Shown: positions 35,461 through 62,571, counted from the stretch's first letter. The stretch: DNA of 64,000 nt from Trichoplax adhaerens (GCF_000150275.1 NW_002060949.1:3726449-3790448), one strand, 5' to 3'. Notes: generated from the sequence alone by a model not told the origin. Made by a program: numbers and translations.

Positions 35461-37840
35461 TTAATTTCCAATTCCTGCATACGGAGGTGGTGGAAGGTTA
35501 TCCTCTTTATCAGTATTATCTTCATCTATTTCATTCTGATATAATTCTTCGCGGTGACAATCTTCATTTGTTTCGGTGCTTACAGCGAGGTTCACTTCGA
35601 TATCATGATAGGACGGTAATACTTGCGATTCTGTATTACATGAAATACCAGGATATGGAGGTGGAGGGTCTTGAAGTCGATTCACAGCAATAGCTTGCTG
35701 TATTTATAATAAATAAATGGATATTATTAATATTAAATTTTATTATGACGCTAATCGTACATTATCAGAAACATCGGTTAACAAGTAGACAAGATTATTT
35801 TAATTACCTGGACTGAATCTAAAAATCTCTGTTCGCTCGAATACCGACAATAATAAATCAAGCTTTTTAAGCAAACTAGAAACGCTACTAGGTAGCAGCA
35901 ACATTCTAGCATATTAATTCCTATACTGGGCCAGTCAGTTACAGTAAAGCTAACAGACGTTCCAACGCAGCATAAAATTAGCCCAACCAAAGATGCAACT
36001 GATGCAATTGATGTCATAGCCGTATAAAAGTATAGCTATAAACAGACATACAAATACACCGATATAAATATGATTAAATAAAATTGAGATAAAACTTTTC
36101 ATTAACCGTGATAAGTGATAGGCACAACCTCAGAATTTAAGAACTAAATAAGTATATTTATTATGATGAACTTACTGCATAGTCTATAAAAACTAGATTT
36201 AGTAATTCAATTTTACATGCAACGTAAAATTTTAAGGCTTTAAGTAAAGTACGCATATAGCAAAAGGATAATTACCCATGTTTTAAGTATAACGTTAATC
36301 CGAAATGTTCCTATCCCTAGTAATCCAGCGATCAGTACCTATGATTAGGAAGTCGTCACTTTGATTAGATTTGTGAGCATCATAAGGATTAGATAGTAGT
36401 CGATTGTATATCCTATAATTTCTTTATCGGCAATATGTAAAAGTAAAGTAATAAAATTCTATAATAGCGAAATTTAAATTAGTAGCCGTGTACGAAAATA
36501 TTTTTCGTAACTTAAGGTTAGATTAGGTTAGGGTTAGTATTAGGGGTAAAATGAACAGCAGTATAAATTATAATTATATTGAGTTGCTATAATAAGTCAT
36601 ACAATTTAGTCTGTGTTATATATGACTTTTTCATATTTTATGCCTTAGTTACTGTGTGGTAGCATGTTACAGTACTTATCTGTTCACATGCATGGCTTTT
36701 ATAGCGAAAATACAGCGACTGATAAGCATTTAATGCGATATACTGAAATGCATTTAATCACATTTACCTACAGTATATAGTGGTATGATTGCAACAAAAA
36801 GAAATCAAATTACATAGCTACGTCCTTCTAGTTCTCTTTATAGCCGGTAGTTTCGGTGAATTACATACCGGACTGATATATTTAGGAAAGCTTAACTCTA
36901 CCACTACTATTCTACCACTGAGGCTTGAATAGTGTATACCCATTTATGTATTTTAAGCTGGGTATCTATAGTAGATTACAATATCGCTGCACACCGACGG
37001 GGAACGTATCGTAGAATATTAAAATTTTGGCACAATAAGATTACACAAACGTTGTTATAAAATGTGCCTTGATACTCGTATATCACATTTTTACTTCTAA
37101 AGTAAAAATTCAAAAATGAGTTTGACTTATAATACAATATAATTGGTATTCGATAGATAACTCTGATTTATATCCGAGGGCCTGACTGCATGTCGAGCCT
37201 TTAATAAGAAATTTTAGTCGATAATAAATCACTTTATAGTTAAAAGAAAGGAAATGTTGTATATCGGAAATCGGCATGACGTATATACATTGATGAAGAA
37301 TATCTGCTGATACTTGTACATGTTATCAATTATTTTTGCCCTTTATAAAAATATCATATTAAAATAGATTGTATTTGCATATTACACAGTACATTGGTTC
37401 AGTAAGTTTTACTACCGGTACCTTAGTACTATAGTAACGTAGGTACCTCAATAAAAATTAAAAATAACTTCTGACGGTTGAATATGCTATACAGTGCCAA
37501 TCAAGATATCTCTTTGTATATATAAGATCGATGGACATAGACTATCCGCTTAGGACAATTTAGAGCGACAAGATTACAATATCTAGTTTTTATAGTTCGT
37601 AACACAGTACTATCAAGTGATGAGAGATTAAAAGTCTATTTCACTTACCGTTACTCCGGCCCAAAATGAGTGAAAGAAAATATCGGTATTGGAGTTATAT
37701 CCTAATAAAGCCAAACATACAAATCCAAAAGTTACAAAGAGGACACCTTGTATTGTCAGGATAACTGCTAAACGGTAACATTGTCGTCGAAGTTTTAACT
37801 GATGATCGTTGGGAATTGAAATATTACTTTGTCGGTTCAT
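35461..37840 (-). CDS. CD20/MS4A-like tetraspan protein A with PPxY tail (ENTREP/FAM189-like), 4 exons, ~239 aa
   Basis: Exons 37840-37649, 36338-36276, 36035-35808, 35697-35461, all phase 0 with GT-AG. Reads TM1, then HSFWAGVT|VLIAGLLGIGTFR, TM3, TM4; tail DPPPPYP, LPSY, LPPPPYA. Confidence 0.85.
36491..36556. repeat. Short palindrome plus degenerate (TTAGG/TTAGGG)n tract in intron 1 of gene A
   Basis: tacgaaaa-tat-ttttcgta followed by taaggttagattaggttagggttagtattagggg. Confidence 0.4.
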
Positions 37841-38351
37841 AATTTTAGATTAAAACAAAGTCAAAATTATCAGGCACATGCAAACTATTTTAAGTCATCA
37901 TAGCCACAAATATCATCTGCGACCCTACCAAGTATCGTGATACAACAACAACAAAAAAATAAACCAGGTGCCTATTTCTATTGTACTATACTGAAGTCAT
38001 CTACACCAGTTAGTTTTGTTATAGTGTACCAGTGCTATTTTATATTAAGGTATTTTGGTCATTTATTTATTTTATTTTATTATGTATTTCTTTCCTTTTT
38101 ACTTTGTAATGATCCGCAGTTGCGTGGTTGCGCATACCGTAGTATATTACAGCAGTGCACCTTTATAAAAGCATAAAGGTATTGGTACTGCATTGGATTA
38201 CATTGGACCTTTGTTCTACGGACGTGATGTACACATAAAAGAAACTAAAATGTACGTCAATAATGATAACTAGCAACACAAACTAGATCCTGCATCCGAT
38301 ACGATTTTATAGTCTATATATGGATTCCATTAGCGTATTGTGCACTTCTTT

Positions 38352-39133
38352 GTAACCCACAATTCTGTGAGTGAGTGTTGAATTACAATTCATTAGTTAG
38401 TAGTAATTTTAATTCGTATATTCATATATAACAGACGTATCTAATATATATACTTATACAGTATACGGATATACTCGTATGTTGTATATTACACCGATTC
38501 GCAATGGACACAGTTAAAAAAAAATCATGCTTAGATAATTGCATATCATGCGATATAACGTCTTGATATAGGCTTATCTAAGCAAAGACTTTTTTAGCTT
38601 TATGTAATCTGACCCAATCTATTGTATAAGAGTATATTAATGTACGTATATATTGTAGCAGGGACTTGTAAGAGAAATTCCTGTTCCTACATGCCTTGGG
38701 CCCTTATGGACCCAAGGTTTCCGCTAAGTGCACTGATGGAGTAAACCACAATTCAGTGAGTGTACGCTGGATTACAATTCATTAGTTAGTAGTAATTTCA
38801 ATTCGTATATTTATAAATAACATACGTATCGAAAATATACACTTATCAGTATACGGGTATACTCGTATGTTGCACATTACGCCGATTCGGAATGCACAAT
38901 GTTAAAAAAAGTTATGCTTAGATAATTGCCTATCATGCGATATTATGCCTTGATACAGGTTTATCTAAGCATGGCTTTCTTAGTTTTATGTAATCTGGCC
39001 GGTCTACTGTATACGTATACGAGTATATTAATGTACGTAGATAATGCAGCAGGGATTTGTAAGAGAAATCCCTTTTCTCACATGCCTTGGGGCCTTTGGC
39101 ACCCAATATTTCCACTTGATTTACTGATGGAGT
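38352..39133. repeat. Diverged direct tandem duplication, ~389-bp unit x2
   Basis: gtaa(c/a)ccacaattc(t/a)gtgagtg..attacaattcattagttagtagtaattt at 38352 and 38741; colinear through acatgccttggg..actgatggagt. Confidence 0.92.
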
Positions 39134-40718
39134 TAAGATTTTTCTAAAGTTTCTAAATAAAAACGTCAACTCATCGTTCATTCATAGAAAGTTCACTCTG
39201 TTATGTGTAATTGTCCTTTGTACATATTCAAAAAATAGAAAGAATTCTGTAATAGAAATTAACCAAGACAGATCTCGTTTAAAAATTTTGTGTAATCGAT
39301 GATACATTGACGAACGTATACTCTTACTCGTATTGTATTTTAGTTTGAAGCTAGTATTAATAACGGTACTAAATTGTAAATAAAGAGATGAATTATATAA
39401 TTATAGTTCCGCATAAAATACTATACTACGCAATTTTTTGGCCTTTTTCCTTGGTCTCTGTGAATAAAGAATGTGTATACCATACTATCATTCATCTAGC
39501 TATTTATTTCCACAAGCTATTAGACTACATTTAATGATGTCACCCTTATTGCAGGTGATAACGTCTTTGCTTACTCAAATGCATTTTGTACACGTAACTA
39601 CTATGCGTACAATACATACAATATATAACGATCGAAGATGTTATTTAACCAAAACTGTGCTTGCGATATTCCTACGTATACATACTGTACAGTATTAATT
39701 AGATAATTATGTATTAGGACTATATTTCGCTAGCGGTTCATGGTATTTTATTATTCGTAGCACTACTGAAGATATCAATATAACGAAATCATATTGCAGG
39801 TACGGCGTGATATTGTAGGCTAGCGATGTGACCCGTTGGGAATGTTTACCACTCATCAACAATTTCGATGAGCTCAACGGCTGAGACTATGTAATATACA
39901 ATTAGGCTTTCAAGTACAGTATGCTGCAATTATGTTTTCTGTGAGCTGTCGTATTGGTAGCCAACCAGGCAACAGTAAAACTTATAGCCATGCAACAAAT
40001 GGTATCATTCATATACATCCTACATGTAATTTTTGATAAAATCGCTGTTACTGTATTATGCTCAATTTTTTCCAGATAGTAATGCTTAGGTATTATCATA
40101 ACATGTCGTGAATAAGATTTAAAAGATTCACTTTATTTTACTATTCGTATTCGAGCACATACAACAAAGATTAGATAACTTACTGCCAATGAGCATCATT
40201 GTAGAATATTGTACATTGTCCCTGATAACCATATCGCTAGGATTAGAGTATAATTTGTAATGGCCATATCTACCTTTAAACTTACTGCATTGCAAAAAGT
40301 AATATTTAATCACAACATTTTGTTTACATCATGCAAATCGGATTAGAGAAGAAAAATAGAAGCAAAAGTGGACGTATTTACAGAAAATTTTTAACATTTT
40401 TCGTACTCGCGGAACATTAGCATTCGTGCGAAGAGGTTACTGCATCCATACTAGATGGTTGCTTGTGAGATGATCAAAGTTCATTGTAAATAACATTCAG
40501 TTACGCATAAAAGAATAGATTATAGTTCTTAACGGACATATACACTACAGATGTAGTGAGACATATCCTAATTACAACTAGAAGTAATATAGGAAGGTAC
40601 CGTGATGTCAGAGATGGAACGTCATATTAAATTTACGTTTAAATAAGAATGGAGTTAAATTATGAATAAGTGCAAAGTCGCAAAATTATGATCATCCAAA
40701 ATTTGAATTACATCATAA

Positions 40719-43700
40719 CTAGGACATTACAAGATTGACGGTATCAGTATGACCGCTGTTTTTAACCGCTTGTTTTCTAACCAAATAGGCAATACGGAAT
40801 AGCAGCGCCGTTAAGCCCAGTGCAATTAAGTAAATGACAATTTCGATACTATCCATGACGTACGCAACAACCGGTTCATCGTGCTTGATGGTTGCTAATC
40901 CAACTATACATAAAATCATACCAGTAACCGACAAGATAGCAGTTACGACGTTGAGGATAAAAACCACGATAAACTGAAAAATGAATTGGAAGATGAGTTA
41001 GGGTTGTTACTTTATTAAGACTATCTCGATGTATTATTATCTGCGCTAGCATATATAATACAGTCTAAGTGTAATGGCGTATCTGCGCGTCTTAGCTTAC
41101 AATATAATATAGAGAGAACTAATATTTTATCACGTATTTTTTACACTGCAACGTGCAGAAGATATAGTATAGTAAGGGCTCCATTTGCGTCGTTAACGTA
41201 TGATGTTTTGAGATCGATAATATGGGTACAATTTTCATTATCGTCATATTGTCATAATACTAACATTAATGTTTACAGTAGGATAGAAAATATTCAAAAT
41301 ACTGTCTTTAAATTTAAAATCTTTATTACACTGTAGCTAAGACTCATGAATAATAATAACGAGTGCATACCATCCAAGCTGGAGGCAAAGTTTCATCTTT
41401 GAGGGTTTTCATTCCAGTGAATCCAGTAATGAGAATCTAAAGATAGGATGAATTCATTGTTTATTTATATAAAATGATTATGATCGATTTGTTCGTTGAT
41501 TCATTAAAATACCATAAAACGGATAAAATTTGCATCACAGATCTTATAGAACCGAGCAATTTCAGTTTAGTTGATAACTGCGGTTAAAAGGTTACTATTG
41601 CGTAATTTCGCGATACTAGACACTAATACCGTAGGTGAAGTAATGTGATCATAAACTGAAGATCCATCTACTAGTTCACATGGCTTCAAACTCAATGGAT
41701 CGGTACTAACAGTCAATTAGTAGGAATTGGATATAAATCCAGTATCGGCAAGGTCGGACCGAATCCTGTTCAGATGTTATTATTGATGTCCAATTGAATT
41801 TATTTTTTTTATCTTTCCTCTTCCTAGATTACTTTTTCTTTCGAAGTGCACGGCATACAGTACAACATTGGTTATAGTACCGTCCTATATACTAATTTTT
41901 GGCTATCGCATGGCTGCTAGAGAACGAGCATTTAATGCGCAGTACTGTACACACAAAAGGGGGAAATGGAGATTACGGTGCCGGGATGACTAATTTTAAG
42001 AGGCAATTTTTTCTTCATCATTGCCTTCAGTTCCTTCGGCACTGTACACTATCATAGACTCCTCAAAATGCCTACTTATAGCTATTTTTAGTAGTCTAGA
42101 ACAGAGTATCTCATCTTGAATACAGTTAGAATGACAGTAAAGTTGAAAACGGTAATACTGTACCGTGCCAGCTAGTTTTTGACCTTTTTTTCCCGTTGGG
42201 GAAATAGTACAAAATTAACTGGTAGTAGTTCCCGGATAACATGGTTCGGTCAATGTCGGTCATATATATGAAAAACGATACACTACTATACTGCCCTCGA
42301 TTCCCATCGCAACTTAGCAGCTTGGTTGATTTTGTAAAGTATGGTATACGGTTTCAGTGATAGCGTATGGTGAAATGAGGGGGGGGGGGGGGAAAGTAGT
42401 CAGCCTTTCATTATTTTGTACTGAATAGTCAGCCATTGCCTGTTTGTTCTTCTCTTTCCTTATAAAAAAAAAGTTGCTGGTACGATCATGGACTACTACT
42501 ACGGTCGATGCACCAGCACTTGTTATTTGCTGTAGAAGTCCACAGCTGGTACACTACTGTCTAGTACAGTATGGCAGAGCGATTGCGGTTGCACCGGGTG
42601 TTATAAAGGTAAAAATATGGTAAACAAATAAAGTAATGCAGTTGTCAAGCTTTTGAATATACAAGTACAGTATGTTAATTTGCATGCGAATAGAAAGAAA
42701 TTGTTAACATATATAGTACAGTACAATGGAATAGTACTGAATAAGTGAATATCTTGATGACAACANNNNNNNNNNNNNNNNNNNNNNNNNNNNNNNNNNN
42801 NNNNNNNNNNNNNNNTACAAAAGTAGCAATTCGCAGTGCGGTATTCTCGTTCATGGATCAATCATGGAGTAGTGACTATCTTATAGGCTGTTTACGGTTA
42901 TCCTCTATCACGGAGCGAATCTTGTACTACCATAAAAGAGTTACCAGTTTGGTAAAATTATACCCCATAGGCAATACGGTCTAGTACTTCATCAATAAGG
43001 ATATTCATCTATCCCGGAGAAAATAGGTCTTATTGTCTTTCCTTATTTGTAAGGCAATATCAAGGTACTTCTCTTTTACCACAAATTCAATACACAACGA
43101 GTATGAGTATTTTAGAGAAAAATATTCATCCTAATGATATTGATCGCAACACAATTGTACATCGAACTATGATGCTGTCAAGGAGTTGTTTCATGTTACT
43201 TATGGCACATACAGTAGAGTAGTCTCCTCGACAGTAAGCTTCTTGAATGGGCAAAAAGCCAATACTCTACATTGTACTGTATTCCACTAGACCCCAATTT
43301 AAAAAAATTTTTCGGATTCCATGATACTACAGTAGTTCAATGGCGTTGCAATAATTCATGGACACGATATCGCGCAGGAAACATGCGAAATCTCCATGCA
43401 ACTATAACGCCGGAAAGAGATGTTTCATGTTATTTATAGTACTGTACTGTCCATAGTCTTGAAAGGTCCGCTTCTTGAATAGCGGCAATTTCTTTGTGAG
43501 ATAAGACAACAAAATACCGTAGTAATATTAATATAGTCAACCACATGCTCGTGGTAAGTAATGGCATGTTTGGAATCAACTTCCTGCTCTGCCAAACTGA
43601 ATTGTTACTACCAATTGCAAACTTGATCGTTCTGAATTTTGTAGCGCAATTGGAAAGAAGGCAAACAAACTGAGTGTAAAGTCCATTCTACATTATTAAA

Positions 43701-44238
43701 CAACAAGCAGTCAATATTGTGGCTGGTACTTTAAAGTTTGGGTAACTGCCAAAATACAACCATGTAGTACAAAATACACTACTTCCAATTTGGTTTAATT
43801 AAATAATAATAATAATACCATTACTACTTATAGTATAGCAAAGTCAAAATTGAGTTTCTCCGAGGAAATCATTTGGTCATTCACACTTTTTCCTCAAGGA
43901 AATTATTCAATCGCCGCTGTACTTTGTCACTTGCTATACCGCACAGCTACGTTCAAAGACCATTCAACGCTTTTCAACTTGAATAATAATATTAATTCAT
44001 CTTTGGTTTAATCTTACGATACTATACTTCAACTTACAAATCCACCAGCCCAAAATAGATGATAATGTAAATCGGTAGTAATAGGAACTTTTGTACCATC
44101 GCCAGTGATGTGTTCACCTAAACCTAAAGCCAGTAGGGCGATACCGGCAAGAGTTAATACCAAACACATTCTGGAAACTTTCTGAAACGAAGGAAGACCC
44201 TTGGTCGGTGGTTGCTGTTCATTTTCGTTTTCCGCCAT
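40719..44238 (-). CDS. CD20/MS4A-like tetraspan protein B, 3 (possibly 4) exons, ~173 aa
   Basis: Exons 44238-44038 (..YHLFWAGGF|gtaagt), 41436-41371 (ILITGFTGMKT..W), 40973-40719 (two TM helices). The 3' end is uncertain: possible donor after 40731. Confidence 0.8.
42766..42815. other. Assembly gap (50 N) in intron 1 of gene B
   Basis: Run of n. Confidence 0.99.
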
Positions 44239-44486
44239 CGTACTATCAACAAGGCTACTTTATGATTTGATACAACTGCGAGACTTTTACCACTAAGATC
44301 AGGTCAATTCTAACGTACAATAGTCACAACTGTAGTAATCCAATGTACAAGGTAATTCCACCAATTTTTCAAATTCTACAAATTAATCACTGGCGATTAA
44401 CCAAACGTAAATAAAACGCGGACTCTGGTCGTGGCCAAAGTTATAAATAAACGATTTAGCACGTTGTGCAATAGCACGTCTGCTGG

Positions 44487-44702
44487 TACCGTACAGTACC
44501 GTACAGTACAATGCACATTCCTTGGACCTCGCTGATTGTACTGTAGCCAAATGGAAAGTGAATGGAACTGTACTGTCGAGCACAGTACTTCCGAATTTTC
44601 TTGATAGGACTACTGTACACTGTACACTGTAGGGCAGAGACAGACTACCGTGCGGACAGACGACAGCATAGTGCACATACTGTACTATACTGTACTGTAT
44701 TG
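44487..44702. promoter_or_regulatory. TACAGTA/TACTGTA-rich region upstream of tetraspan gene B
   Basis: gtaccgtacagtaccgtacagtaca, tactgtacactgtacactgt, tactgtactatactgtactgta, 250-460 bp 5' of the ATG at 44238. Confidence 0.4.
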
Positions 44703-47700
44703 TGAAAAAAAATGAGACAAAATGATCACCACGACACTGCCATCAATCGCTGCGATATCGGATTACGCCCTCTTTTGAATTAATGTCACCATGTTGTTCT
44801 TTCCCACAATCGCCAGTGATTACCAGTGATCCTTTTTTTGTCAGTGTGGTGATGCACCCATATTTGATTATAACGATAGCTAGATTTGATATGCTGTAGT
44901 TCGGTTATTGTGAATCGATGTTATCGCGAAGCTAATATTCGATGATTGCCAACGACAGTACTATCGTAGAAATTGTGGATGACTAATATTAGCCAATGGA
45001 CTAATTATGGTACAAAATTGATGTGGCTAGAAACACTGTAGTGGTTAAGATGCCCTTGGGAGAAAGGGACTAGACTTGAATAGGAGAGTAGTGACATCTT
45101 AAGTAGAATGATTTACATTGTAAAAGATAATGATCTACTATTTGAGAAAGGTATTTTGTTTGATGATTCATGTTCACGCTGCTTGGACTGTACATTAATC
45201 AGGTGGTCAGAAATGGATTGAACGAAATGGATATATAATATAGAACATATACATGTACATTATTGTACAGTACAGTCAGTAAGAACTGCAGAGATGAGCT
45301 TACAGCACAGTACAGTAAGAACTGAAGAGATGATTTCATGAGAGAAAAGAGACTTCACTTCGCTTTGAGCTTGGAATGCTGCCAATAGTAGACTAGATTC
45401 TTGTAGCAATTAATAATTGCCTTACTATTCCTAAAATCTTGTAATAAAAGCCTTTTAGAGAATACTATTTGACTAAGATTGTTATTTTGAGACACTTTTA
45501 TTCTACTCAGGTATTTGCTGTTCACAACATAATCCACCACTAGTATGCTTACTATCGATAGAATACAGTACATTGCAATATATTTTACTTCATATTGGAC
45601 CAATACTGTATTTTATTTTAGCAAATCGTCGCTTGCCTGGTGTACACGGTGGTTGGAAAGGCATTGAATATTAGAAATCGACTTTATCAGTATGCAAATG
45701 ATGAAGCATGGTCAAGTAGCCCTTCTTAAGTCTTCGATTTTGTGCCTCTTACTTATGAAATAACTTAGATTGTCATCTCTCTCTCTTATTATGGTCTCTA
45801 AAATAATGCAGATCTTTCAGAGCTTGGCTAATTAATACAGTGCCATAATAAATGTATGAAAAATTCATTTCTAATGTATAATTAGGATATCAAATATCAA
45901 ATGACTTTCCTCACACCCTGTACTCTATACTATCAACTGTTCTACGTTATGACATGGTTATGCAATCGACTCGTAAAAGAATTGCGCAAGTGCAAGTACC
46001 TGAATGATGTCGCACCAAGGACTGTGTATACGTTATAATACACAGTAGTCAAATAATATGAAATAAAACAAATCAGTAAGATAGGCCTTCATGAATAAAT
46101 ATGCTGGAAGTAAATTATAATTAACGGAATGAAATCATTAAACTATACTTTGTAACTTAGTCCTTGAGGATAAGATTGAAAGAACATTTTCTGAAGAGAA
46201 ATATGCATATCCATTGCTATCCTATATTATAAATGTCTACGCATTTATATTATATATATATAACATAACATATACAAATATGTACTGTATACAAGTCGCA
46301 TACAGAGACATGTTACGGTATGTGCAAAAATATAGTAAATACGTCGGTAGTACTTGGTCTGAGTTGGAGGCTCCGACAACGGCTGGTATTACCTTATAGA
46401 TATTCTGAGCGTATGATGGAATGATTAGTATTAGCTCTATTCAATAACATTTTATCCATAATGCTATTGCTTTACAAGGATTAATAATAGAATTATAAGT
46501 TAGCGCTCCTTATACAGACTTAGGCTCATATGCTGAATAACGCGGCAATGCAAAATTAGTTGTTGCGTTCAAAATTTATTGTATTATTACGCGTAATCTT
46601 TAAACGCTTATAGTAGAAGGAAAAGCAAGCTGATATCTCAATTTTCCACTGTTGAAATCTTGGACTGCAACCACTTTATAATGGGTATTACGATCAATAC
46701 ATTAGCCATGAAAATATGAATATGCAGTAATTACTAATGCTGGTATATCAACTTCAGTAATATATAGAATAGCGGAATTTAAGAGTTTAACTCAATTTCC
46801 AGCACATACGTAATTAAGGCTAGAGAAATTTATAATTATACAATAGAACGACTTATTTGGATATGAATATGATAAATGACAATGATCACAGGAAAGATAT
46901 GAGTAATATAAAGCATACTATTCCATTAATCTAAAATAGGCGAACGGAAATTTTACTAGTTTTTGGCTTAATATAATACGCGAAAGCTCAGATACGAGAT
47001 CGTAACTTAAAACTCAAATTATGCTCATATATCTCCTCGTATTTACGATGTAGCGAACAAATTTTACTGTAAGTTTCTAAGATATCAACTCCTTGCATGC
47101 TCCGTTGAAATGCAGCAGGCATTTGCTTGAAGCTAATTTTAAATCAAGTAATTAGCCACATCTCTACTGTCTCTCATATCGCTATCATCGAGTAATTAAT
47201 TTTGTTAATTTCCATAGATCTTCATACATTAAAAGTTTAACCATCTGGATACCATATCGCATGTTCTTCAAAATTATAATTATCACTGCAACCTATAAGG
47301 GTATGTTCAAATCTAGTAACGCTTATTATGATATAATGATACTAAAAATAGATAATTCTTAACGGAGTAGTACAGTTTAAGATATAGATCTATATAACTA
47401 TTGTCATATTTTGTAGTCTATAAATGCAGGTATGTGATGATAGGGTTTTTAACCCTTAATTTTATACAAACAAAGTGAATAGTAGAGGTACGCGATTTAA
47501 TCATGCCAGCTTACCCGATACTTATTTTATTGTCAACAACCGATTATTCTACGTTACATAATGCTTTTACTTCATACTAACCTTATATTCTTCAATAACT
47601 CAACTACTGTGATCAGCTGAAATCTCTATAAAGAATACAGTCAAGAAAAATATTATTTCCATACTTTACTAACTACGTATACAGCAATCATTCAGCAATG

Positions 47701-49915: not shown

Positions 49916-52405
49916 ATGGCAGTTAAATTTAAAAATTTATATCACTATGGCTATATTTCCAATCACCATTACGTTATGACGTTATTAGTGGTTTTGCTTT
50001 TACTAAATGGTGTAGCGAGTGTTATTATTGGAGGTTTTAGCATCGCATCTGAACAATATTATACCCTAGGTGCCAGAATTTCCGCTCCTATTTGGTGTGG
50101 AATAGCCGTAAGTAATCCATGATCGTGTAATATTTCTTCTATCGCATTCTTTTAAGATGAAAGATAACTGAGTAAACAGTTTTTCTTGATCAATAATCGA
50201 CATATACCCGCAGATTTTATCGCATTGATTCCTGTAAGGAACTGTTTTTCACTTACCGTACAAATTTTCTATAGCTACCATTAAATACACCGGTAAATAG
50301 TATAAGTCCTTAAAGTCTTATTTAGTTAATAACTGTGGTATAGTACAACAGCGAAATGCTATTTCATTAATATCGGATAAGTTATGTCCTACGTGCTAGT
50401 GAGTCTTTAATATTTTCAAGCGATAGTACACGGATAACTTTAGATTACTAGTATGCGAATATAAATCCTTTCTACCACGCATTATTTCTATACCTTTGCC
50501 TACAGCGAGTATAAGATATGTTCTCTTATTGATAAATTTCTCAAATATACGCATATGTCAACACGATTGATGCCGCCTAAGCTAACCAGAACTCAGTTCT
50601 TACCATTTCATGTCCAATGGTACCGTAGCGCTTTTTTTACTTGCATACCGGATCGTTGCCTATTTGTGATCTACGAGATAATTGCTGTTGGGAATCTCTT
50701 ATACTATATAGGGCTTCGTCACATCTACGTATCCACCGTCGTTTTCAGTTATATAGGTCATAATCGTTATTTGTGAATACATTTTTCTACGTACTTTATC
50801 TACCCGTATGCAATACGCATTACACTAATCGGGTTCCTTAATTATGTGAAATTAACTGTACAATAGCATTCCTTACCTTACAGTATATGATCGTAAATAA
50901 TCAAATTTCACGAAGCAATGCTAATCATTTAACTTTTCCATGATAAGTTACGCACTGTATACTTCAGGCCGTAGAGAAAGACTGGTCATCCACCGACCCA
51001 AATATTCTCTTATAAATCGGGCGATCTAGCAATGTAACATTAATGAAAGTATTTTGCCAACTTGATAAAGATTGTACTAACAGGCAGTCCTTTGTTCCAA
51101 TTAAACATACACCGTTAAATTTATATAAAGCTAATTAATATTGAAACGTTACAAGATTATATTATATATTACCTTCACGGATTTGTAATCTGGTGATGAA
51201 ACTGATTTGCTATATCTTCGCTAGATAGCTGGATATAATATCAGTACTTTTGTCAATTTTTTCTATTAGGTTACTCTTTCTGGAATCTCTGGACTGTTGA
51301 ATTTGTGTTATCGCGATAGTATTGCACACGTAAGTTAGCATCATGCTTACTTCACAATAGCTCAGGATAAAGTGATTAATTTACTAGTTTATTGTTACAA
51401 AGGCTTCCAAAGCTAATAATAAGTCTAATCTCTTGCGAATACGTGCCATTTATATTTTACAAAGAAATGTATCTAGCATAAGTTAATAATTTTTTAACTA
51501 CCAATAAAGCCAATCGTAGAACCAGAGCACTTAGTCTTGTAGTTTACTTATGCCAGTTCTACGCTAATTTTTTATTATTACTGGCGGTTTGACGTAGTGA
51601 AAACAGTACAGAGTACTGGTCTCCTATGAATATTGTCCTTTGCTATGTAGAATTTTATTCAAATTTGATAAAGAGAATTTTAGTTTTACATCTAATGTTA
51701 ATTCTGAACTCTTAAAATCTGTAGTTACTCATTATTTATGTACTGTATGAATTTAGACCAAATGGTTTTATGGACTCTCTATCTTTGCTGCGGTTACTAA
51801 TGCTTTCGGTTTGGTAACTCTATTTTTGGGTATTGGTTTCCATAGCCCATTCAATATTGCAGCGGATGTTTTGATCGGAGTTGGATTTTTATTATCTGTT
51901 ACAACTGCTTTAATGATCGGCTGTGGGGTTTATTGCTACCGTGATGACTTAGTAAGTTAGATTTAAGGCTGCTTGGATCATTGAAAGACATAGTGATGTT
52001 AATATAATAGTCAACGACCAGTTAAGGCATGAATTTCATATTTTTGGAGTGATTTACCAATAACGTTAATTGTAAAATTTGATTAAAGCACTGATATCGT
52101 ACTAAAATATGCTTTTCATTAATAGTCTTTAATTCAAAAAGGGACCTGGGCTAGCATAAATCATAGCTTAGCTTATAGAAAGATGGGTCAAGATATATAC
52201 GATGATGCCAATTACAGGATAGGTAAATTAAAATATAATAAACTAATTGATGCACTTCATAAAAGTTGAGACGCATTTACATATACTGAAATACGATATA
52301 ATTTCTAAAATATTATGCAAAAGAAGCTTAAATAATCTCTGTATCTTAATTTATATACCAGAGGTTCGAAAGTCAGGCAAGATCATCGAAAAGTCCGAGT
52401 TTTAA
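49916..52405 (+). CDS. CD20/MS4A-like tetraspan protein C, 4-5 exons, ~195 aa
   Basis: Exons 49916-50107 (..SAPIWCGIA|gtaagt), 51270-51329 (VTLSGISGLL..), 51757-51951 (two TM), 52126-52222, then 52362-52405 (alternatively exon 4 reads through to a stop at 52269). Tail contains AYRKMGQDIYDDANY. Confidence 0.82.
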
Positions 52406-55400: not shown

Positions 55401-56063
55401 TTACTCTTCTGGCAATAATATCAAAACTGTAATTAAATTCTATTTGCAGAAGGCCCACGCTATTATCTTATTCGTTCTCTAATTTCTATAAAGCAATAAC
55501 TATAGAGAGAGATAACACGTACAGTTAGTCTAATATTATACTAGCGTACCTATAATACGTTCAAAAATATCGAACACATTGGATAGCAAAAGTAGTGTTT
55601 ATACGTAGACTTAAAATTCAATTTTATATAGATTTTTGGGCAATCATAATTTTCTTGAGATTTTTCTGAACCTATAAACTCATAATATGCTAACATGGTT
55701 TCTTTAGAGATCGAGAAAATCTATCCGAATAGTAATAACGATAAAAATTTCTAAATCGGGTTGGCTAGAAATCGTTTTATGCCTATTCACATTGATATAC
55801 AGACTATACTGTAAGCAAAGAACAAATATGATACAATTACAGTGTAAAATGAGTCAACCTAATAGTTAAGCCGCAATAGGAAACTATATTACAATTTCGT
55901 AAGACAGTTTAATAAACATTTAATCAGAAAACACCATATAAGTAGGAAAACAAGCAAATATAGCTATCATCGGCAGTCTTTAACTTCAATAATTGAGATC
56001 GGTACGGTAGTACCTTGCTCGGAGTTGTTAGAATTAACAAATAGTATTTACTGGATCATCACA

Positions 56064-57299
56064 ATGAGTAAGTGTATACTGAAGGATTACGTTCTAGTAA
56101 TATCCCTTCAGCCTATTAATATCCTTACATTCTAGATTCCAATGTCAACATTTAGCTATGACAACAAGAAATAACTCAGTTACTGGAAATTAAATACAAA
56201 AATTATGTTATGAACATCTTAGGAGCCCAATCAGTGATGCTTTATTTTTGTTCTTCTACTCTATTAAAATTTTTACGTACACTTGTAGACTGATATTCAT
56301 TGATCAGCCTAATAGATTCTATAAAATATAGCAAGATAGGAAATGGGATTATTTATGTTAGTTACTTATTCATAAGATTTCTGCTAAATTCTATTCAGTC
56401 TAAGGCATCAATACTAGATAAAACAATTTCAATCTTTAGTATTGTTTTTGACGCCATGATAAATGATTAATTATGTAAAATGGCTTCTCAAAAATTTGCT
56501 ATAAAAGCTCCTAAGTGTTTTGTAGCTTTTCCATTTACTTAAAGTTATCTAACTATACGATCAGGGTTTAAGCTTGATAGTTATCCGTAAGAATTGAAAA
56601 ATACTTATATTACTGCATACAATATTGTTTTGCTAGTAGGATTATTTCCATCTGTGGCCTGTCTTGGGAGAATAAATTGACAATTATTTTAAGAAATAGA
56701 AAGCTTTCCCTTTTTTGTAGATCTAGAGATGGTTATGCACTTTGGCCCAGGTCTTGATGTTCCAATCTTAGTGGCTACATGTATTAGCCTGATTGGTCTA
56801 GCCATTAGTTTGGTTATTATTTGCATAAATGTAAATTGTTCGGATCATAAGGTAAGCAAAGGAAATGTCACACTGTATTCTAATCTTTCGTCATTGAGTG
56901 CTCTAAAATGGTTATTTTATTACAAATTATTTTTTTACAAAAATATCCGCTACTATTAATAATTGATTTTGTTATGAGCATTAACAATGTATACCTTCGT
57001 GTTATGCTATAAATAATAACCAACTTATATTAGTGTGTACCTCTATAAAACAAATAGAGTACTTACAATTATATTGTTGCAAGGAAAAAAGCTTGGTAAT
57101 AGGTACAAATCTAATTTATGATACTATGTTGAACTATAATTAGAAAGAAAGGATGGGAGAGCTAGAAATTCCGACAATTGTTATTGAAGACTACGATGAA
57201 ATTCTCAGAAAAAACGGTGAAGGTGAAAGTGGGAAAGTAATTCATGGACGTCGATTATCTGTATTACCGGGTGGAGTAGCCGATGATGCAAACATTTGA
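56064..57299 (+). CDS. Small single-pass (type III-like) membrane protein D, 3 coding exons, ~96 aa
   Basis: acaATGA|gtaagt (56064-56067), tgtag|56721-56851|gtaagc, attag|57144-57299 give MNLEMVMHFGPGLDVPILVATCISLIGLAISLVIICINVNCSDHKKERMGELEIPTIVIEDYDEILRKNGEGESGKVIHGRRLSVLPGGVADDANI*. The first exon is the least certain. Confidence 0.65.
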
Positions 57300-60200
57300 A
57301 ATCAATTATGGATCTTTTCCCAACTCTTTAATGGAGTTACTTATATTAGTTTGTGTCTAATCTATGGTCTTACTCTATGAGACGGCTAGTAAAACTTATT
57401 CTATTAATAAGTAAAGATGTATTCAAAGAAATTCATGAATAATTTATGGAGAAACGAAAAGATGAATCATACTTCCTGAACTAAGAAGAAAATGGGTTGG
57501 AAGCCGATAGCAGCTTGAATTATAGGCACATTTAAATAACATGACATAGACAAATTTTATATCGAAGTAATTTTCTAGTCGTATACGCAAAATGAGCAAA
57601 TGATCGTTGTAAAGGACTTAAAATGGCTTACTGTCAACATATTGATAAACATACCTTCTTCAACAAGCTCTGATGTAGGTAAGAAATGATTCTCCTGTAA
57701 ATAACGAAAATTTGGTCACACTTGCGCGAAAAATTTCAACGAATTCTTATTCTAATAAGAATGAAATCTGACAGTTATCAATATCAAGCAAATCATTGCG
57801 TGTGCAATAGCTCATAGTTAATAAATTGCAATTCCAAGTCCATTTCTAGATAAGAAATGAGACAAGGTCGACTTTTAAATGTTGCTAAAAATCAATATTC
57901 TATGTATTGATAGAGGAAAGAGCTGTAACACAGCATTGGTCAATTTAGCCATGAAGAGTAGCAATTCCATCTTATCTTAAACATGGCTAAGCAATTGGTT
58001 AGATTATGCTCAGTATTATCGAAGCAATTTGTTATCGAAACTTCAATGAAAGATTCACAACAGCTGCAAAAATGAAGTGATCTTATACGAAACTAACATT
58101 CGTTTCATGAATCTACTGATAGACAAGTTTAATAAATTTATAGGATCTATACTTAGGTCAATTGAAAGTGTAAATTTAGCTAGGGCCCCCATTTATGTGA
58201 GTACGGTAAATTATTTATAAAAGTCATAGCTTCTAATTTATAAATAAGTATGCATCGAATTATACCTATGTTATTTCTGAAAAGTTGTTAACAACCTCAT
58301 CGATTATTTCTAGCATTTCAGTAATTTATATCTAGGTGCGGTATTAATAGTATATAAGTACTGTACTAAATCGTAGACTGCTTTGCTTATGTTTGTTTGA
58401 AGCAACATCATACAGGTTATGCGAATAATCTAATGTAATTTGAGTGAGTGTTTTAAGATGGCTCACTCAATTTAGTAGCAGGATATCTGACCATTGTAAC
58501 TACCGCACCGATCGATAAAACGAGTTTTATTTGGCACCGGATTTATATCGTATTTTATTATTAAAATTAAATTATAAACTATTACTGTTCATAAAATGAA
58601 GTTTTTTCGATGTTTCACTAATCTCAATGTGAATTGTGTAATTAATGAGATGTTAAATAATATTTAGCAAGTTTTGTAAAGTTAAGCCACCTATTCCCTA
58701 TCGATGTCATGACGTCAGTGAGTCATAACTATTGATCACAAGTCGATATCTTGTTAATCATTTGGTATAAAAAAGATTCACTGAAATTTACCCCTTTACA
58801 TCTTCATGTTTTACGTCATAAAAAATCCACAGCTTTTAAATAATTTAGGAATTTGAGTGGGCACGTTCTTTTCTATAAATATTGTACATTACTTATTGCT
58901 TGATGGACAGTATCAATTAAATTAAAGTATAATTGGGTACTTTTCACGTGCAATTTATTCCAGTGCTAATCGATTTTTGGATGTTATAAAATTTTACTCT
59001 TCCGAATCTGATCAGTTGCACCGTCATGCAAATTGGCATACTTAATATTAGGATTTAAAAAGGTTAATAATCCTTAGCAATTAATGTGTAAGTCAGCTTA
59101 AGGTATGTAAAAAATTACATGGTATATCATAATTGAGAATAGAGCATTCCCTAAAATCATTCTAAAATGAGATTTTCCTTTATTTTCTCTCTCTGTATAC
59201 AGTATATATCAGGATGAATGATTCCGCAGAAATATGATATTACTACAGATTTCGACATAGAAATAGAGCTTGAAAAATATGCGTTGATATTAGTTATTCT
59301 TAAGATCCTATTCCATGGTGTTATTACAACCTACTTGCAGTATTTCTGCACATCAATCATGGCGAATTTAGGCAGTGTCAGCTTGAAAAGGTTAATGCAA
59401 TGACTATTTAAATCGTCTTTAATATTACCATTAATATGGAAGGAAAATTCATTTGGAATGGCATGCTAAGCTTTAGGACACATTAAGATGTGCAATGAAA
59501 ATGGCAATGAATAAATTTACGATAATGCTTCTAGGCTAGTAATTGTTGTAGAATTTAAGATTGCCAATATCACAAATCTCTATTCGGAATATTTATATCC
59601 ATTGCATCAACTTGTAAAAATTTACAAGTATTGACCACTTTTCTTAATCTACAGATTACTACGCTCGAAATTTTTATTGCAAATCCACTTTGCAACTATC
59701 TTTTTCGTATCCAGCTATGTAACTGGATATAAGTAGGATTATTTTTGCATATGCTTGATATTGATCTTTATTTGACTAGAGATACAATCGCGATTCCGTT
59801 CAATTTTTAAATTAATATTTGAGATAAGATTATTTTTAAGGATAGATTTAGGGGATAAAGATACTGCTATAAAAGTATAAATCGAAATACTATAGAAGGT
59901 TTATGCTGGTATTAGCAGTACAGACAATGGCTTCAGGACTTTGTTATAAATAAAATCATAACTCATTTCAATTTTTAAATCAGTATTTGAGTATAAGGTT
60001 CCTAATCTAAGGGATAATTTTAGAGAACTAAGAAAGCCTAAGTGTAAAAAAGAAATCGAAATAGATGATTTTTGGTGGCATCAGCATCGTAGGGTATGAC
60101 CCCAAGGCTATGCTATGAATCATGATTATAAAATGAACTATTCTAAAATTTTCATTTTAATCTAATTAATTTCTTAATTAAATATTTTTAGTTAAGCTTT

Positions 60201-60652
60201 CAGTCATTTTGTAGATAAGACAATATAAAGCAGCTTTCCGTATTATTCCGTGGCTACAATGGCCATGAGGCATTTTAAGCAACTTCTCTTACTTTATCTT
60301 GTGTTCAGTCGCAGGTAGCTTAAATTTCTGCCCATATGTTTTATATTGTAATAATGTAATAGTGTACACCTATGCAAAATATCAATAAATTGTCTTATTT
60401 GCAACCTAAGCCTGTTGTAGAAGGGTGCTGATTATTGAAAATCTGGCCAAATTAAACGAAGTCTTATTGCATTAAAATTTAGTCCAATATAATTGTCTGC
60501 AGATTTTGTCAAGCAAGTATTCTTGCTAAATACAAAATAAACAGCACTGAGTAGCACTTTTCCAGCTATCAACATATTTAGTGATTTTGGCAGCAGATTT
60601 GTCCACTTCGCTATTTGAAAATTGCATTATACCCGTATTCAGTAAGAAAAAA

Positions 60653-62571
60653 ATGCAATATATCCATCCAGCAGCAACTTCGAGAATACCAAGATACCTT
60701 TTAGCTACGAGCATTTTTCAGATTATTAGTGGACTAGGTGCATCAATTACCGGCAGCGTAGCTTTCATTCTACGTCAAGAAGATAGCAATGTTGGCTTAG
60801 TGAGTGCAGGAGGAATATGGAGTGGCTTTTTTGTAAGTATAATAATATTTTTCGTTACTTGTATGCTTTCCAGTATATATATAATCGCGTAAACATCATG
60901 TTTTGCTTTTAAATATGAACAAAGTCTTATCTCCTGAAATTAACTATAATTTTATTAGTATTAGTTTTTTAATACTATAAATAAAAAAAGATAGCTTGCT
61001 GTACTTTAGCTTTTATGTTATACATTTTACTTCACTATTATGGAAATGTCCAAGTATATTAATTACATTTTAATTCTGGAACTAAAGTATTAATATTTGA
61101 AAGCTTCACATTAGCCATATTATTTAATTTCTTAAAATCAAATGATACCTGATGATATGCTACCAAATTGTATTGGATAAATCTCAATATAACATTTAAT
61201 TAGCCACAGTAATGTGTCGTATGGTACATTAGGAGAAGATTATCTATAAAAAAGAAGTAAAAAGTGATCAAATCTTTGAATCTTTGAATTAATAGCCATT
61301 GTATATGTAGTTGCAAGCTTGAACTAAGAACGAGGTTTAACCATAAAATTTATCAAATTATTAAATAGTATAATCCATAAATTCACCAACTTTAGCAACG
61401 ATTAAAAGAATTGAGTACGTAGATAAATCAAAATATTACGGCCAAAAAATTAATTATGAAACAGTCAGTAAATCTGAGAGCTAGCTGATGGTATAGGTTA
61501 AATAGAATAAAATTCGCTATCTGTTAGATAAATGTTAGCATTTTACGATTAACCTTTCCTGGAGAATTGGGATATATACGAAAAGAACAATTAAGAATTA
61601 TTACTATAATTTCCGATCAAATTGTCCCGATGTTAGATAAATGAAGTAACCTCTAGATATTTTATATCATATCAATTTCTAAATTGATGATTTTGTCTTT
61701 TATTCGTTGCATTTCGATCTCTTATTAATTTGCTATTCCTATTTATATAGTTAATGTGTAGTGGCATACTTGGTGTACTGTTTCATGTCTTCAAGTACAA
61801 AAATAAGAACTTGGTTGGTATTCTTAGATTCTCATGATAAAAGGCTGTATTAAATTAACAAGTCTAATTGCAATTAATCCACGTGCATTATATCTATCAT
61901 CTTCTGAATTTAAATATATAATCCTAGATTACGATCACTACGTTTACTGCTATAGCTATACTGCGAAATTGTACTAACTTGAATGAATAATTGAAACTGT
62001 TAGGCTGCAGCAAGAGTAATTTTGTCTTGTATGGCAGTGGCTACATCAGCTACAGCATTTGCTCTTCACCTATATGGAACAAGAACGAAGATTTCTGTTT
62101 ATCTTAGCGCTTTTCTAGCTGTAGGCTTTGTTTGCAGTATGACTAAAACCTCCATTGTAAGTTACGATTGTTGCCGGACTTTGACAACCGAGGTAAAAAG
62201 TGTTGACGAATTTCATTTTAAGTTACTATTTTAATTCAGCTGTATTATAAACGCAATATAAATTTATGGTCACTTTCATTCTCGTTCAACATATAAACAT
62301 AAAATTTTTCCTTTTGTGACTGTAGGAAGTAAACCGAACTACAGTAGCTCCAGCAGTGAATTATCCTTATTTACAAGTTCCTGTCTTCGTTGAGCCTGTT
62401 CCACGATATAGTAATAATACCATCCCTCTTCAAAATCTTCGCTCTCATCATAACGAAAATCCAATTATCGTTAGTTATCCGCAAAGTCATCAATTTCCGA
62501 TGTCGCAAACCTATAGCAATAATCCATCGGCTTTCGTTACTTACAAGCCAGCTAATAAAGTGGAAGCTTGA
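60653..62571 (+). CDS. CD20/MS4A-like tetraspan protein E with Pro/Gln/Tyr-rich tail, 4 exons, ~225 aa
   Basis: Exons 60653-60832 (..FQIISGL..GGIWSGFF|gtaagt), 61751-61813 (LMCSGILGV..), 62004-62192 (two TM), 62326-62571; all phase 0. Confidence 0.85.

What the first reader, a model, noticed from the sequence alone, without database searches (positions are those of the whole stretch)
35461..62571. Hidden cluster of four highly diverged CD20/MS4A-like tetraspan genes with a shared exon plan
Seen: four genes, fragmented in the ORF track, share one architecture. Exon 1 carries TM1 and ends, phase 0, in W-x-G-x-x (FWAGVT, FWAGGF, IWCGIA, IWSGFF). A 60-66 nt exon 2 opens with x-x-x-[AST]-G-x-x-G (VLIAGLLG, ILITGFTG, VTLSGISG, LMCSGILG). 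Exon 3 holds TM3+TM4, followed by tail exons (uncertain for B). A and B are on -, C and E on +, pointing away from 44.3-49.9 kb. Outside this motif the proteins barely resemble each other. Known: PFWxG..SGxL is the CD20-like family signature (MS4A, TMEM176, sarcospan, FAM189/ENTREP). Vertebrate MS4As are clustered immune and Ca2+-signalling proteins, and some act as non-GPCR chemoreceptors in mouse necklace neurons. Inference: an independent, old, fast-diverging MS4A-like array in a probable early-branching animal, possibly a chemosensory or innate-recognition receptor set.
Basis: partly seen in the sequence, partly recalled or inferred. Interest (0 to 1): 0.82.

Follow-up and report, generated by a model that had tools for sequence, protein, structure and literature searches.

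The report
Four diverged CD20-like tetraspan genes
Four neighbouring genes of the placozoan Trichoplax adhaerens encode small four-helix membrane proteins that are very distant but real relatives of the CD20/sarcospan family, which extends that family, with its intron positions, to one of the earliest-branching animal lineages.

Summary
The window is Trichoplax adhaerens. Four genes, A and B on the minus strand and C and E on the plus strand, share one exon plan. Exon 1 ends in phase 0 right after W-x-G-x-x. Exon 2 is 60-66 nt and opens x-x-x-[AST]-G-x-x-G. Exon 3 carries TM3 and TM4. Both patterns occur only at these four genes in the whole window.

The N gap lies in intron 1 of gene B and is bridged collinearly by the Trichoplax sp. 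H2 assembly. H2 gene models confirm A, B and C. Both public annotations skip exon 2 of E, so it stays unverified. Orthologous exons in a more distant placozoan give dN/dS of 0.05-0.17, so the genes are constrained, not fast-evolving.

Membership of the CD20-like superfamily is likely, about 0.85:
- Pfam CD20 is the top hit for B but below threshold.
- A profile of the cluster alone hits only sarcospan among all PDB sequences (E 6.7e-5).
- hhalign against bona fide CD20-family proteins gives P 5.7e-5; controls score far lower.
- A bona fide hemichordate CD20-like gene has the same two intron positions.

"MS4A-like" is too specific. The chemoreceptor idea has no support, because the extracellular loops are tiny. 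Gene A carries PPxY motifs like ENTREP. Verdict: new, divergent members of a known family.

The parts
37649..37840 (-). Gene A exon 1 (64 codons): N-terminus, TM1, start of TM2; ends FWAGVT, phase 0, donor GTAAGT
   Evidence: Identical in H2 and 89% amino-acid identity in a distant placozoan. dN/dS 0.07.
36276..36338 (-). Gene A exon 2 (63 nt): VLIAGLLGIGTFRINVILKTW, rest of TM2
   Evidence: The orthologue ILTAGLLGIGTFRVDVIFKTW is flanked by AG and GTAAGT in L018.
35808..36035 (-). Gene A exon 3 (76 codons): TM3 and TM4
   Evidence: Identical in H2. Missing from the public model TRIADDRAFT_58209.
35461..35697 (-). Gene A exon 4: cytoplasmic tail with PPPPY (35653-35667), LPSY (35608-35619), PPPPY (35479-35493), then the stop
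   Evidence: The motifs are read directly from the sequence.
44038..44238 (-). Gene B exon 1 (67 codons), ends FWAGGF|GTAAGT
   Evidence: 82% identity in the orthologue, dN/dS 0.13.
42766..42815 (.). Assembly gap inside intron 1 of gene B
   Evidence: the H2 assembly is collinear on both sides and holds 136 nt here. No exon is involved.
41371..41436 (-). Gene B exon 2 (66 nt): ILITGFTGMKTLKDETLPPAWM
   Evidence: Present in public models P0003 and P0015.
40719..40973 (-). Gene B exon 3: TM3, TM4, short tail and stop
   Evidence: The tail is conserved as coding in the distant placozoan (P0020; L018:126-377).
49916..50107 (+). Gene C exon 1 (64 codons), ends IWCGIA|GTAAGT
   Evidence: 75% identity in the orthologue, dN/dS 0.16.
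51270..51329 (+). Gene C exon 2 (60 nt): VTLSGISGLLNLCYRDSIAH
   Evidence: Present in the H2 model P0018. The orthologue VSVSGILGLINVLYRENVTL has AG and GTAAGT flanks.
51757..51951 (+). Gene C exon 3 (65 codons): TM3 and TM4
   Evidence: 83% identity in the orthologue, dN/dS 0.05.
52126..52222 (+). Gene C exon 4 (tail, 97 nt, ends in phase 1)
   Evidence: Read against the H2 model P0018.
52362..52405 (+). Gene C exon 5 (tail and stop)
60653..60832 (+). Gene E exon 1 (60 codons), ends IWSGFF|GTAAGT
   Evidence: 73% identity in the orthologue, dN/dS 0.13.
61751..61813 (+). Gene E exon 2, predicted (63 nt): LMCSGILGVLFHVFKYKNKNL, donor GTTGGT. An in-frame alternative is a donor at 61818 paired with an acceptor giving an exon start at 62011.
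   Evidence: Without it TM2 and the basic loop are missing. Not in public models P0002 or P0017. No cross-species check was possible.
62004..62192 (+). Gene E exon 3 (63 codons): TM3 and TM4. The GenBank model uses an earlier donor at 62157.
62326..62571 (+). Gene E exon 4: tail and stop

Best explanation
The region holds four real, expressed-type genes of Trichoplax adhaerens. They are old paralogues of a placozoan branch of the CD20-like tetraspan superfamily (Pfam PF04103: MS4A, TMEM176, sarcospan, FAM189/ENTREP).

Shown: each protein has four membrane helices and very short outer loops. TM2 is split by a phase-0 intron after W-x-G-x-x and continues in a 60-66 nt exon. Both ends inside the cell is inferred from the placement of basic residues. 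The paralogues duplicated before the placozoan genera split, and each is under purifying selection.

Inferred mechanism: like sarcospan, Fc-epsilon-RI beta and ENTREP, they probably act as small lateral partners of other membrane proteins. They would control the assembly, stability or trafficking of those partners rather than bind ligands themselves.

Gene A: its cytoplasmic tail carries two PPPPY motifs and one LPSY motif. This suggests it recruits a WW-HECT (NEDD4-family) ubiquitin ligase, of which the genome holds at least three loci. It would then act as an endocytic adaptor in the manner of ENTREP.
For: Real genes:
- GT-AG exons.
- H2 models match A, B and C.
- In a distant placozoan, exons are 73-89% identical in protein with splice sites kept. 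Exons 1 and 3 are about 75-77% identical in DNA, against about 45-50% in introns.
- Pooled dN 0.13 against dS 1.14.

One family:
- The exon-plan patterns are unique in the window.
- With a profile built from B and C exon 1, the A and E first exons are the two best non-self matches among 2272 ORF fragments.

CD20-like:
- Pfam CD20 is the best hit for B (P0015, E 6e-4, 20.3 bits).
- A profile of the cluster genes alone hits only sarcospan among 177,635 PDB sequences: E 6.7e-5 and 0.004, aligned from TM1 to TM3 with the W-A-G motif in register.
- hhalign against P0012 and the three domains of P0011, all above the Pfam CD20 cut-off, gives P 5.7e-5 and score 36.3. Reversed or shuffled controls score 17.3 or less.
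- In the exhaustive search of 1.84 billion proteins with the eight-gene exon-1 profile (the cluster plus four other Trichoplax genes), the only non-placozoan eukaryotic hits were those two CD20 proteins.
- Language-model neighbours of C and E are CD20 clusters.
- The Ptychodera flava CD20-like gene has exon 1 ending WMGLL|GTAAGT in phase 0, then a 57-nt exon 2.
- The top four Foldseek PDB matches are Fc-epsilon-RI beta (three times) and sarcospan, though not significant.

Gene A tail and partners:
- Motifs read.
- WW and HECT domains lie together at three loci.
- ENTREP binds ITCH through its PPxY motifs (PMC8811627).
Against: - No gene reaches the Pfam gathering score. C and E get no CD20 hit at all, and tetraspanin scores nearly as well as CD20 for B (18.1 against 20.3 bits).
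- The structure model is weak (pLDDT 69, pTM 0.40). Structural matches do not separate CD20-like folds from other four-helix bundles.
- The alignment used for that model contained bona fide CD20 proteins.
- The eight-gene exon-1 profile that found P0011 and P0012 also held four other Trichoplax genes.
- E exon 2 is unverified. E exons 2 and 3 are not recovered by profiles of the other genes.
- No expression data, no partner and no localisation were available. The mechanism is inference from relatives.
- PPxY conservation outside Trichoplax could not be checked (one search was blank).
Confidence: 0.72

Rival explanations
1. They are the placozoan counterparts of sarcospan, expanded to four genes. 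They would work as stabilising subunits of the dystroglycan or integrin adhesion machinery.
For: - Sarcospan is the only PDB sequence hit by the cluster profile and remains the best hit, at E 0.0074, with the wider placozoan profile.
- Sarcospan has three exons: exons 1 and 2 give TM1 and TM2, and exon 3 gives TM3, the loop and TM4 (PMC3599653). That is the plan of gene B.
- Trichoplax has a dystroglycan (PMC4582122).
Against: - The large extracellular loop of sarcospan is absent. ECL2 here is about 5-12 residues, and only TM1 to TM3 align.
- Trichoplax dystroglycan lacks the dystrophin-binding site, and sarcoglycans were not found in placozoans (PMC4582122).
- The PDB holds few CD20-family sequences, so 'closest solved' is not orthology.
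Confidence: 0.13
2. One reading: an MS4A-like array that serves as chemosensory or innate-recognition receptors.
For: - The genes are clustered and the paralogues are very divergent.
- The family link to MS4A goes through the CD20-like superfamily.
- Fc-epsilon-RI beta (MS4A2) tops the non-significant Foldseek list.
Against: - No sequence search reached MS4A1 or MS4A2.
- The outer loops are very short, leaving little surface for ligands.
- Orthologues are under purifying selection, dN/dS 0.05-0.17, with no sign of fast change.
- There are only four genes here and about eight in the genome.
Confidence: 0.06
3. They belong to another four-helix family (MARVEL, as UniRef labels B; tetraspanin; or an unnamed placozoan family), and the W-x-G motif is convergent.
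For: - UniRef calls B3S162 'MARVEL domain-containing'.
- Pfam tetraspanin scores 18.1 bits on B.
- Synaptophysin and PRPH2 score as well as sarcospan in the shape-only search.
- Zuccolo et al. 2010 judged the invertebrate similarities to MS4A to be generic transmembrane matches (PMC2826416).
Against: - Pfam MARVEL does not appear even at E 10.
- There is no large EC2 loop and no CCG motif.
- The profile search of the PDB hit sarcospan only, among thousands of membrane proteins.
- hhalign is well above the reversed and shuffled controls.
- The two intron positions match a bona fide CD20-like gene.
Confidence: 0.09

Closest known systems
Sarcospan (SSPN), CD20-like family
   Same: - Four helices.
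- The TM1-TM3 sequence profile matches at E 6.7e-5, with P-x-W-A-G in register.
- Three-exon plan with TM3 and TM4 in the last exon, as in gene B (PMC3599653).
- Small scaffold-type protein.
   Different: - No large loop between TM3 and TM4.
- No known dystrophin-glycoprotein partners in placozoans.
- Four paralogues instead of one gene.
- Orthology not tested.
ENTREP/FAM189A2 and FAM189A1/B
   Same: - A CD20-homology membrane region followed by a cytoplasmic tail with two PPxY motifs: gene A has PPPPY twice, plus LPSY.
- A second Trichoplax gene about 107 kb upstream on the same contig (H2 model P0004) has PPVYNPPAY, recalling the overlapping PPPYYPPEY of FAM189A1/B (PMC8811627).
   Different: - Gene A's tail is short, 78 residues against more than 300.
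- Motif spacing differs.
- No sequence similarity in the tail was shown.
- Ligase binding is untested.
- B, C and E have no PPxY motif.
MS4A proteins (CD20, Fc-epsilon-RI beta)
   Same: - Same superfamily and four-helix topology.
- Genes are clustered.
- W-G-G and [AS]-G motif in TM2.
- Fc-epsilon-RI beta chains rank first in Foldseek.
   Different: - No significant sequence or structure match.
- ECL2 is far shorter than in CD20.
- No ITAM.
- The published view is that MS4A proper starts in jawed vertebrates (PMC2826416).
Ptychodera flava CD20-like protein XP_070540654.1 (P0012)
   Same: - Passes the Pfam CD20 cut-off (29.6 bits).
- Found by the eight-gene Trichoplax exon-1 profile.
- Same phase-0 intron after W-x-G-x-x and a 57-nt exon 2.
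   Different: - TM3 and TM4 lie in separate exons.
- Longer ECL2 with cysteines.
- Only about 20% identity.

Membership tests
CD20-like family (Pfam PF04103) | Score above the Pfam gathering threshold (27.9 bits) | tested here: not met
   B (P0015) scores 20.3 bits, E 6e-4, as its top hit. C (P0018) and E (P0017) get no hit. Single exons get no hit. The six-frame search of the genome finds other loci, none in the window. The joined models of A and E were not searched because they have no reference.
CD20-like family (Pfam PF04103) | Profile-level similarity to bona fide members | tested here: met
   hhalign of A9 against A6 gives P 5.7e-5 and score 36.3, against 17.3 or less for the controls. 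hmmsearch of A9 against the PDB hits only sarcospan, E 6.7e-5.
CD20-like family (Pfam PF04103) | Four transmembrane helices with both termini cytoplasmic | tested here: met
   Hydropathy and AF2 give four helices in B and C. The exons of A and E carry the same segments. Orientation is inferred from basic residues flanking TM1, the TM2-TM3 loop and the tail.
CD20-like family (Pfam PF04103) | TM2 signature: (P)-x-W-x-G, then a small-residue G motif five to six residues on | tested here: met
   FWAGVT+VLIAGLLG, FWAGGF+ILITGFTG, IWCGIA+VTLSGISG, IWSGFF+LMCSGILG. The same columns align in P0011, P0012 and sarcospan.
CD20-like family (Pfam PF04103) | Gene structure shared with a bona fide member | tested here: met
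   The Ptychodera gene (L021) has exon 1 ending WMGLL|GTAAGT in phase 0 and a 57-nt exon 2. This is one comparator only.
CD20-like family (Pfam PF04103) | Fold like solved CD20, Fc-epsilon-RI beta or sarcospan | tested here: inconclusive
   The model has pLDDT 69. The Foldseek top four are family members, but at E about 0.9. VIA-align gives Z 10.2 for sarcospan among many generic bundles.
MS4A subfamily | Specific similarity to MS4A1 or MS4A2 beyond the superfamily level | tested here: not met
   No MS4A chain appears at E up to 10 in the three PDB sequence searches with cluster queries P0015, A9 and A10.
Sarcospan | Large extracellular loop between TM3 and TM4 | tested here: not met
   The loop is about 5-12 residues in A, B, C and E. 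The alignment to sarcospan stops after TM3.
ENTREP/FAM189 | CD20-homology region plus PPxY motifs in the cytoplasmic tail that bind WW-HECT ligases | tested here: inconclusive
   Gene A has PPPPY twice and LPSY once. WW-HECT loci exist in the genome. Binding cannot be tested here. B, C and E lack the motifs.
MARVEL domain (PF01284) | Match to the MARVEL profile | tested here: not met
   No MARVEL hit for P0003 or P0015 at E up to 10, despite the UniRef name.
Tetraspanin (PF00335) | Large EC2 loop with a CCG motif | tested here: not met
   18.1 bits, below the 32.1 cut-off. The TM3-TM4 loop is too short, and no CCG is present in the sequences read.

The most novel reading that the evidence does not exclude
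The four genes are the 'missing' sarcospan-type proteins of Placozoa, where sarcospan was reported absent. Their two TM2 intron positions, shared with a hemichordate CD20-like gene, would show that the whole CD20, sarcospan and ENTREP superfamily dates to before the placozoan-bilaterian split. That would overturn the view that invertebrate matches are only generic transmembrane similarity.
Probability: 0.25. Interest if true: 0.6.

Novelty: new member of a known kind. Interest (0 to 1): 0.42.

Why it matters
- It gives a concrete, checkable case that the CD20-like tetraspan family reaches down to placozoans, with shared motif, profile similarity and intron positions. An older analysis concluded that invertebrates lack MS4A-like genes (PMC2826416), and sarcospan was reported as not found in T. 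adhaerens (PMC4582122).
- It corrects several public gene models: exons are missing in TRIADDRAFT_58209, and probably in TRIADDRAFT_58213 and TrispH2_000677.
- It offers a simple system for asking what the ancestral job of these small scaffolds was. Gene A is a candidate membrane adaptor for NEDD4-type ligases.
- It is not a new kind of system.

Tried and rejected
- Pfam on single exons gave nothing for CD20.
- PF04103 searched in six frames over the whole genome hit three other loci weakly and none of the four genes.
- The word-based protein search with a CD20 alignment returned only its own query. With gene A's tail it found no candidate. So PPxY conservation outside Trichoplax and a broad CD20 alignment could not be obtained.
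- Single-sequence PDB searches with C, B and the Ptychodera protein P0012 were uninformative.
- The AF2 model of B without an alignment was poor (pLDDT 64). With a 19-row alignment it reached only 69.
- The ESM Atlas shape search and the wide VIA-align search could not tell CD20-like folds from other helical bundles.
- E exon 2 was not found in the 658 nt of orthologous intron available. It is not recovered by a profile of the other second exons.
- Papers naming the locus tags: none found.
- Chance ORFs are rejected on conservation, dN/dS and the H2 models.
- MARVEL and tetraspanin are rejected on the tests listed under membership.
- Joined spliced models of A and E, with exon 2, have no reference and were never searched or folded. 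Searches went exon by exon, or used the public full-length proteins P0015 and P0018.

Full report
**What the window is.** The genome has 105.6 Mb in 1414 contigs at about 32% GC. Proteins encoded in the region are on record as Trichoplax adhaerens TRIADDRAFT_58209, 58210 and 58213, on a contig of the same length as the window's contig. So this is the placozoan T. adhaerens.

**The observation.** I read the four genes base by base.
- All introns are GT-AG.
- Exon 1 of each gene ends in phase 0 right after W-x-G-x-x, with donor GTAAGT.
- Exon 2 is 63, 66, 60 and 63 nt in A, B, C and E, and opens x-x-x-[AST]-G-x-x-G.
- Exon 3 begins in phase 0 and holds two hydrophobic segments.
- A scan of both strands of the window for W.G..|GT donors returns exactly the four first exons.
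- A scan for short AG...GT exons opening xxx[ASTGC]GxxG returns exactly the four second exons.
- A and B lie on the minus strand, C and E on the plus strand, diverging from 44.3-49.9 kb, as stated.
- The paralogues are 15-29% identical exon by exon.

**The assembly gap.** The N run at 42766-42815 lies inside intron 1 of gene B. The Trichoplax sp. H2 assembly aligns at about 99% on both sides without rearrangement and has 136 nt in its place. The gap touches no coding sequence.

**Are they real genes?**
- The H2 annotation has a 173-aa protein (P0015) that is letter for letter the three window exons of B.
- It has a 195-aa protein (P0018) that matches C exons 1-3 apart from two residues in exon 2 and adds two tail exons, which I located at 52126-52222 and 52362-52405.
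- It has a gene for A whose range and product length, 239 aa, equal my four exons.
- The GenBank models are poorer. TRIADDRAFT_58209 (P0014) joins A exon 1 straight to exon 4. TRIADDRAFT_58210 (P0003) gives B a different tail.
- Both models of E (P0002, P0017) skip exon 2.
- Contigs from a more distant placozoan (Logan SRR30664516/7 and two ENA metagenomes) carry orthologous exons at 73-89% protein identity, and 50% for the short exon 2 of C. AG and GTAAGT stand at the same places.
- In those contigs, exons 1 and 3 are about 75-77% identical in DNA, against about 45-50% in introns.
- dN/dS is 0.05-0.17 per exon; pooled dN is 0.13 and dS 1.14.
- B's short tail is conserved as coding, which favours the three-exon H2 model.
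- So the genes are constrained. The paralogues are old and each has its own orthologue.

**E exon 2.** It restores a full TM2 and the basic TM2-TM3 loop seen in all relatives. Its donor is GTTGGT. An in-frame alternative exists: a donor at 61818 with an acceptor giving an exon start at 62011. Neither annotation uses exon 2, and I could not find an orthologous copy. It is likely but unproven.

**Family size.** The Pfam CD20 model, searched in six frames over the genome, hits three other loci weakly. An exon-1 profile of the four genes adds one more. All four extra genes end exon 1 with W-x-G-x-x|GTAAGT or GTATGT and have a 57-60 nt exon 2 opening x-x-x-[AST]-G. The family therefore has at least eight members, and the array is not all of it.

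**Is it CD20-like?** Evidence for:
- Pfam on the full-length B protein gives CD20 as its best hit, at 20.3 bits against a cut-off of 27.9. C and E give nothing.
- The exhaustive search of 1.84 billion proteins with the eight-gene exon-1 profile found 13 proteins. Apart from placozoan sequences and one bacterial cadherin-domain protein (P0010, probably noise), they are P0012 (Ptychodera flava) and P0011. Both pass the Pfam CD20 cut-off.
- A profile made only of the window's genes and their orthologues (A9), searched against all 177,635 PDB sequences, returns two hits at E up to 10. Both are sarcospan, at E 6.7e-5 and 0.004. They align from TM1 to TM3 with the W-A-G motif in register.
- hhalign of A9 against P0012 plus the three domains of P0011 gives P 5.7e-5 and score 36.3 over 91 columns. 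Reversed profiles score 16.5-17.3, and 40 column shuffles score at most 16.9.
- Language-model neighbours of C (0.92, 193 shared features, 18 of 30 hits) and of E (0.86) are CD20 clusters.
- The Ptychodera gene has the same two introns: exon 1 ends WMGLL|GTAAGT in phase 0, and exon 2 is 57 nt.

Structure does not decide. The best model of B has pLDDT 69 and four helices. Foldseek ranks Fc-epsilon-RI beta (three entries) and sarcospan first, but at E about 0.9. Shape-only searches list many four-helix bundles. I put superfamily membership at about 0.85.

**Which branch?** No search reached MS4A1 or MS4A2 by sequence. The nearest solved relative is sarcospan. According to PMC3599653, sarcospan has three exons, with TM1 and TM2 in exons 1-2 and TM3, the loop and TM4 in exon 3. 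That is gene B's plan. But the large outer loop of sarcospan is missing here, so I do not file the genes as sarcospan. "MS4A-like" is too specific.

**How it probably works (inferred).**
- The outer loops are very short, so ligand binding is unlikely.
- Known relatives act as lateral partners of other membrane proteins. Sarcospan partners the sarcoglycans. From general knowledge, not tested here, Fc-epsilon-RI beta partners the IgE receptor.
- Gene A's tail has PPPPY, LPSY and PPPPY.
- The genome has at least three loci with WW domains next to a HECT domain.
- ENTREP, a CD20-homology protein, activates ITCH through two PPxY motifs (PMC8811627).
- I therefore propose that A is a membrane adaptor for NEDD4-type ligases, and that B, C and E are scaffold subunits with unknown partners.

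**What is known.** The CD20-like family is listed among metazoan-wide clusters (PMC5620054). Zuccolo et al. concluded that invertebrates lack MS4A-like genes (PMC2826416). Adams and Brancaccio did not find sarcospan in T. adhaerens (PMC4582122). No paper names these loci.

**Limits.** Joined spliced models of A and of E with exon 2 have no reference. They were not searched or folded, and that joined step is left out. All searches used single exons by reference or the public full-length proteins. Two of the three word-based protein searches were blank.

Noticed in passing
window 725-4196 and 7559-10159 (+): Two class C GPCR genes with ANF_receptor, NCD3G and 7tm_3 domains. The first is split by one intron; the second is a single 866-aa ORF.
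   Followed up: partly
L002 / L011 (G000:C1408 about 3,618,900, minus strand, about 107 kb upstream of the window): Another CD20-like gene with the same exon plan. Its H2 model (P0004, TrispH2_000652) has PPVYNPPAY in the tail, like the overlapping PPxY of FAM189A1/B. It is a possible placozoan FAM189/ENTREP orthologue. The H2 model seems to carry a spurious insert in the middle of TM2.
   Followed up: partly
L001, L003 / L010 (G000:C1409 5,090,438 and 5,094,747) and L008 / L012 (C1409 2,739,949): Three more family members: a tandem pair and a single gene. Exon 1 ends W-x-G-x-x|GT, and exon 2 is 57-60 nt.
   Followed up: partly
window 35461-37840, 40183-44238, 60653-62571: Public gene models look wrong. 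TRIADDRAFT_58209 lacks exons 2 and 3. TRIADDRAFT_58210 uses a donor at 40782 and a tail exon at 40183-40236 that the distant placozoan does not support. TRIADDRAFT_58213 and TrispH2_000677 skip exon 2.
   Followed up: yes
H2 annotates a 117-aa gene here, with ORFs at 56729-56959 and 57153-57299. It has one hydrophobic segment and no Pfam hit, and is not a family member.
   Followed up: partly
L022:17684-20828 (H2; about 5.8 kb beyond gene E, outside the window): A 178-aa gene whose first exon ends ...QCVSAGV|GTAAGT after a TM1-like segment. It may be a fifth, more diverged member. The profile hit is only E 0.21.
   Followed up: partly
window 44894-45597: Between B and C, the H2 and T. adhaerens assemblies align in several overlapping, shuffled pieces. 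This suggests tandem repeats or a small rearrangement.
   Followed up: no
P0003 / UniRef B3S162: UniRef names gene B 'MARVEL domain-containing protein'. Pfam MARVEL does not match it at all.
   Followed up: yes
window 26374-28218 (-): A 614-aa serine-rich ORF with no Pfam hit. The H2 neighbour of 812 aa carries a weak IRS (PF02174) mark.
   Followed up: no
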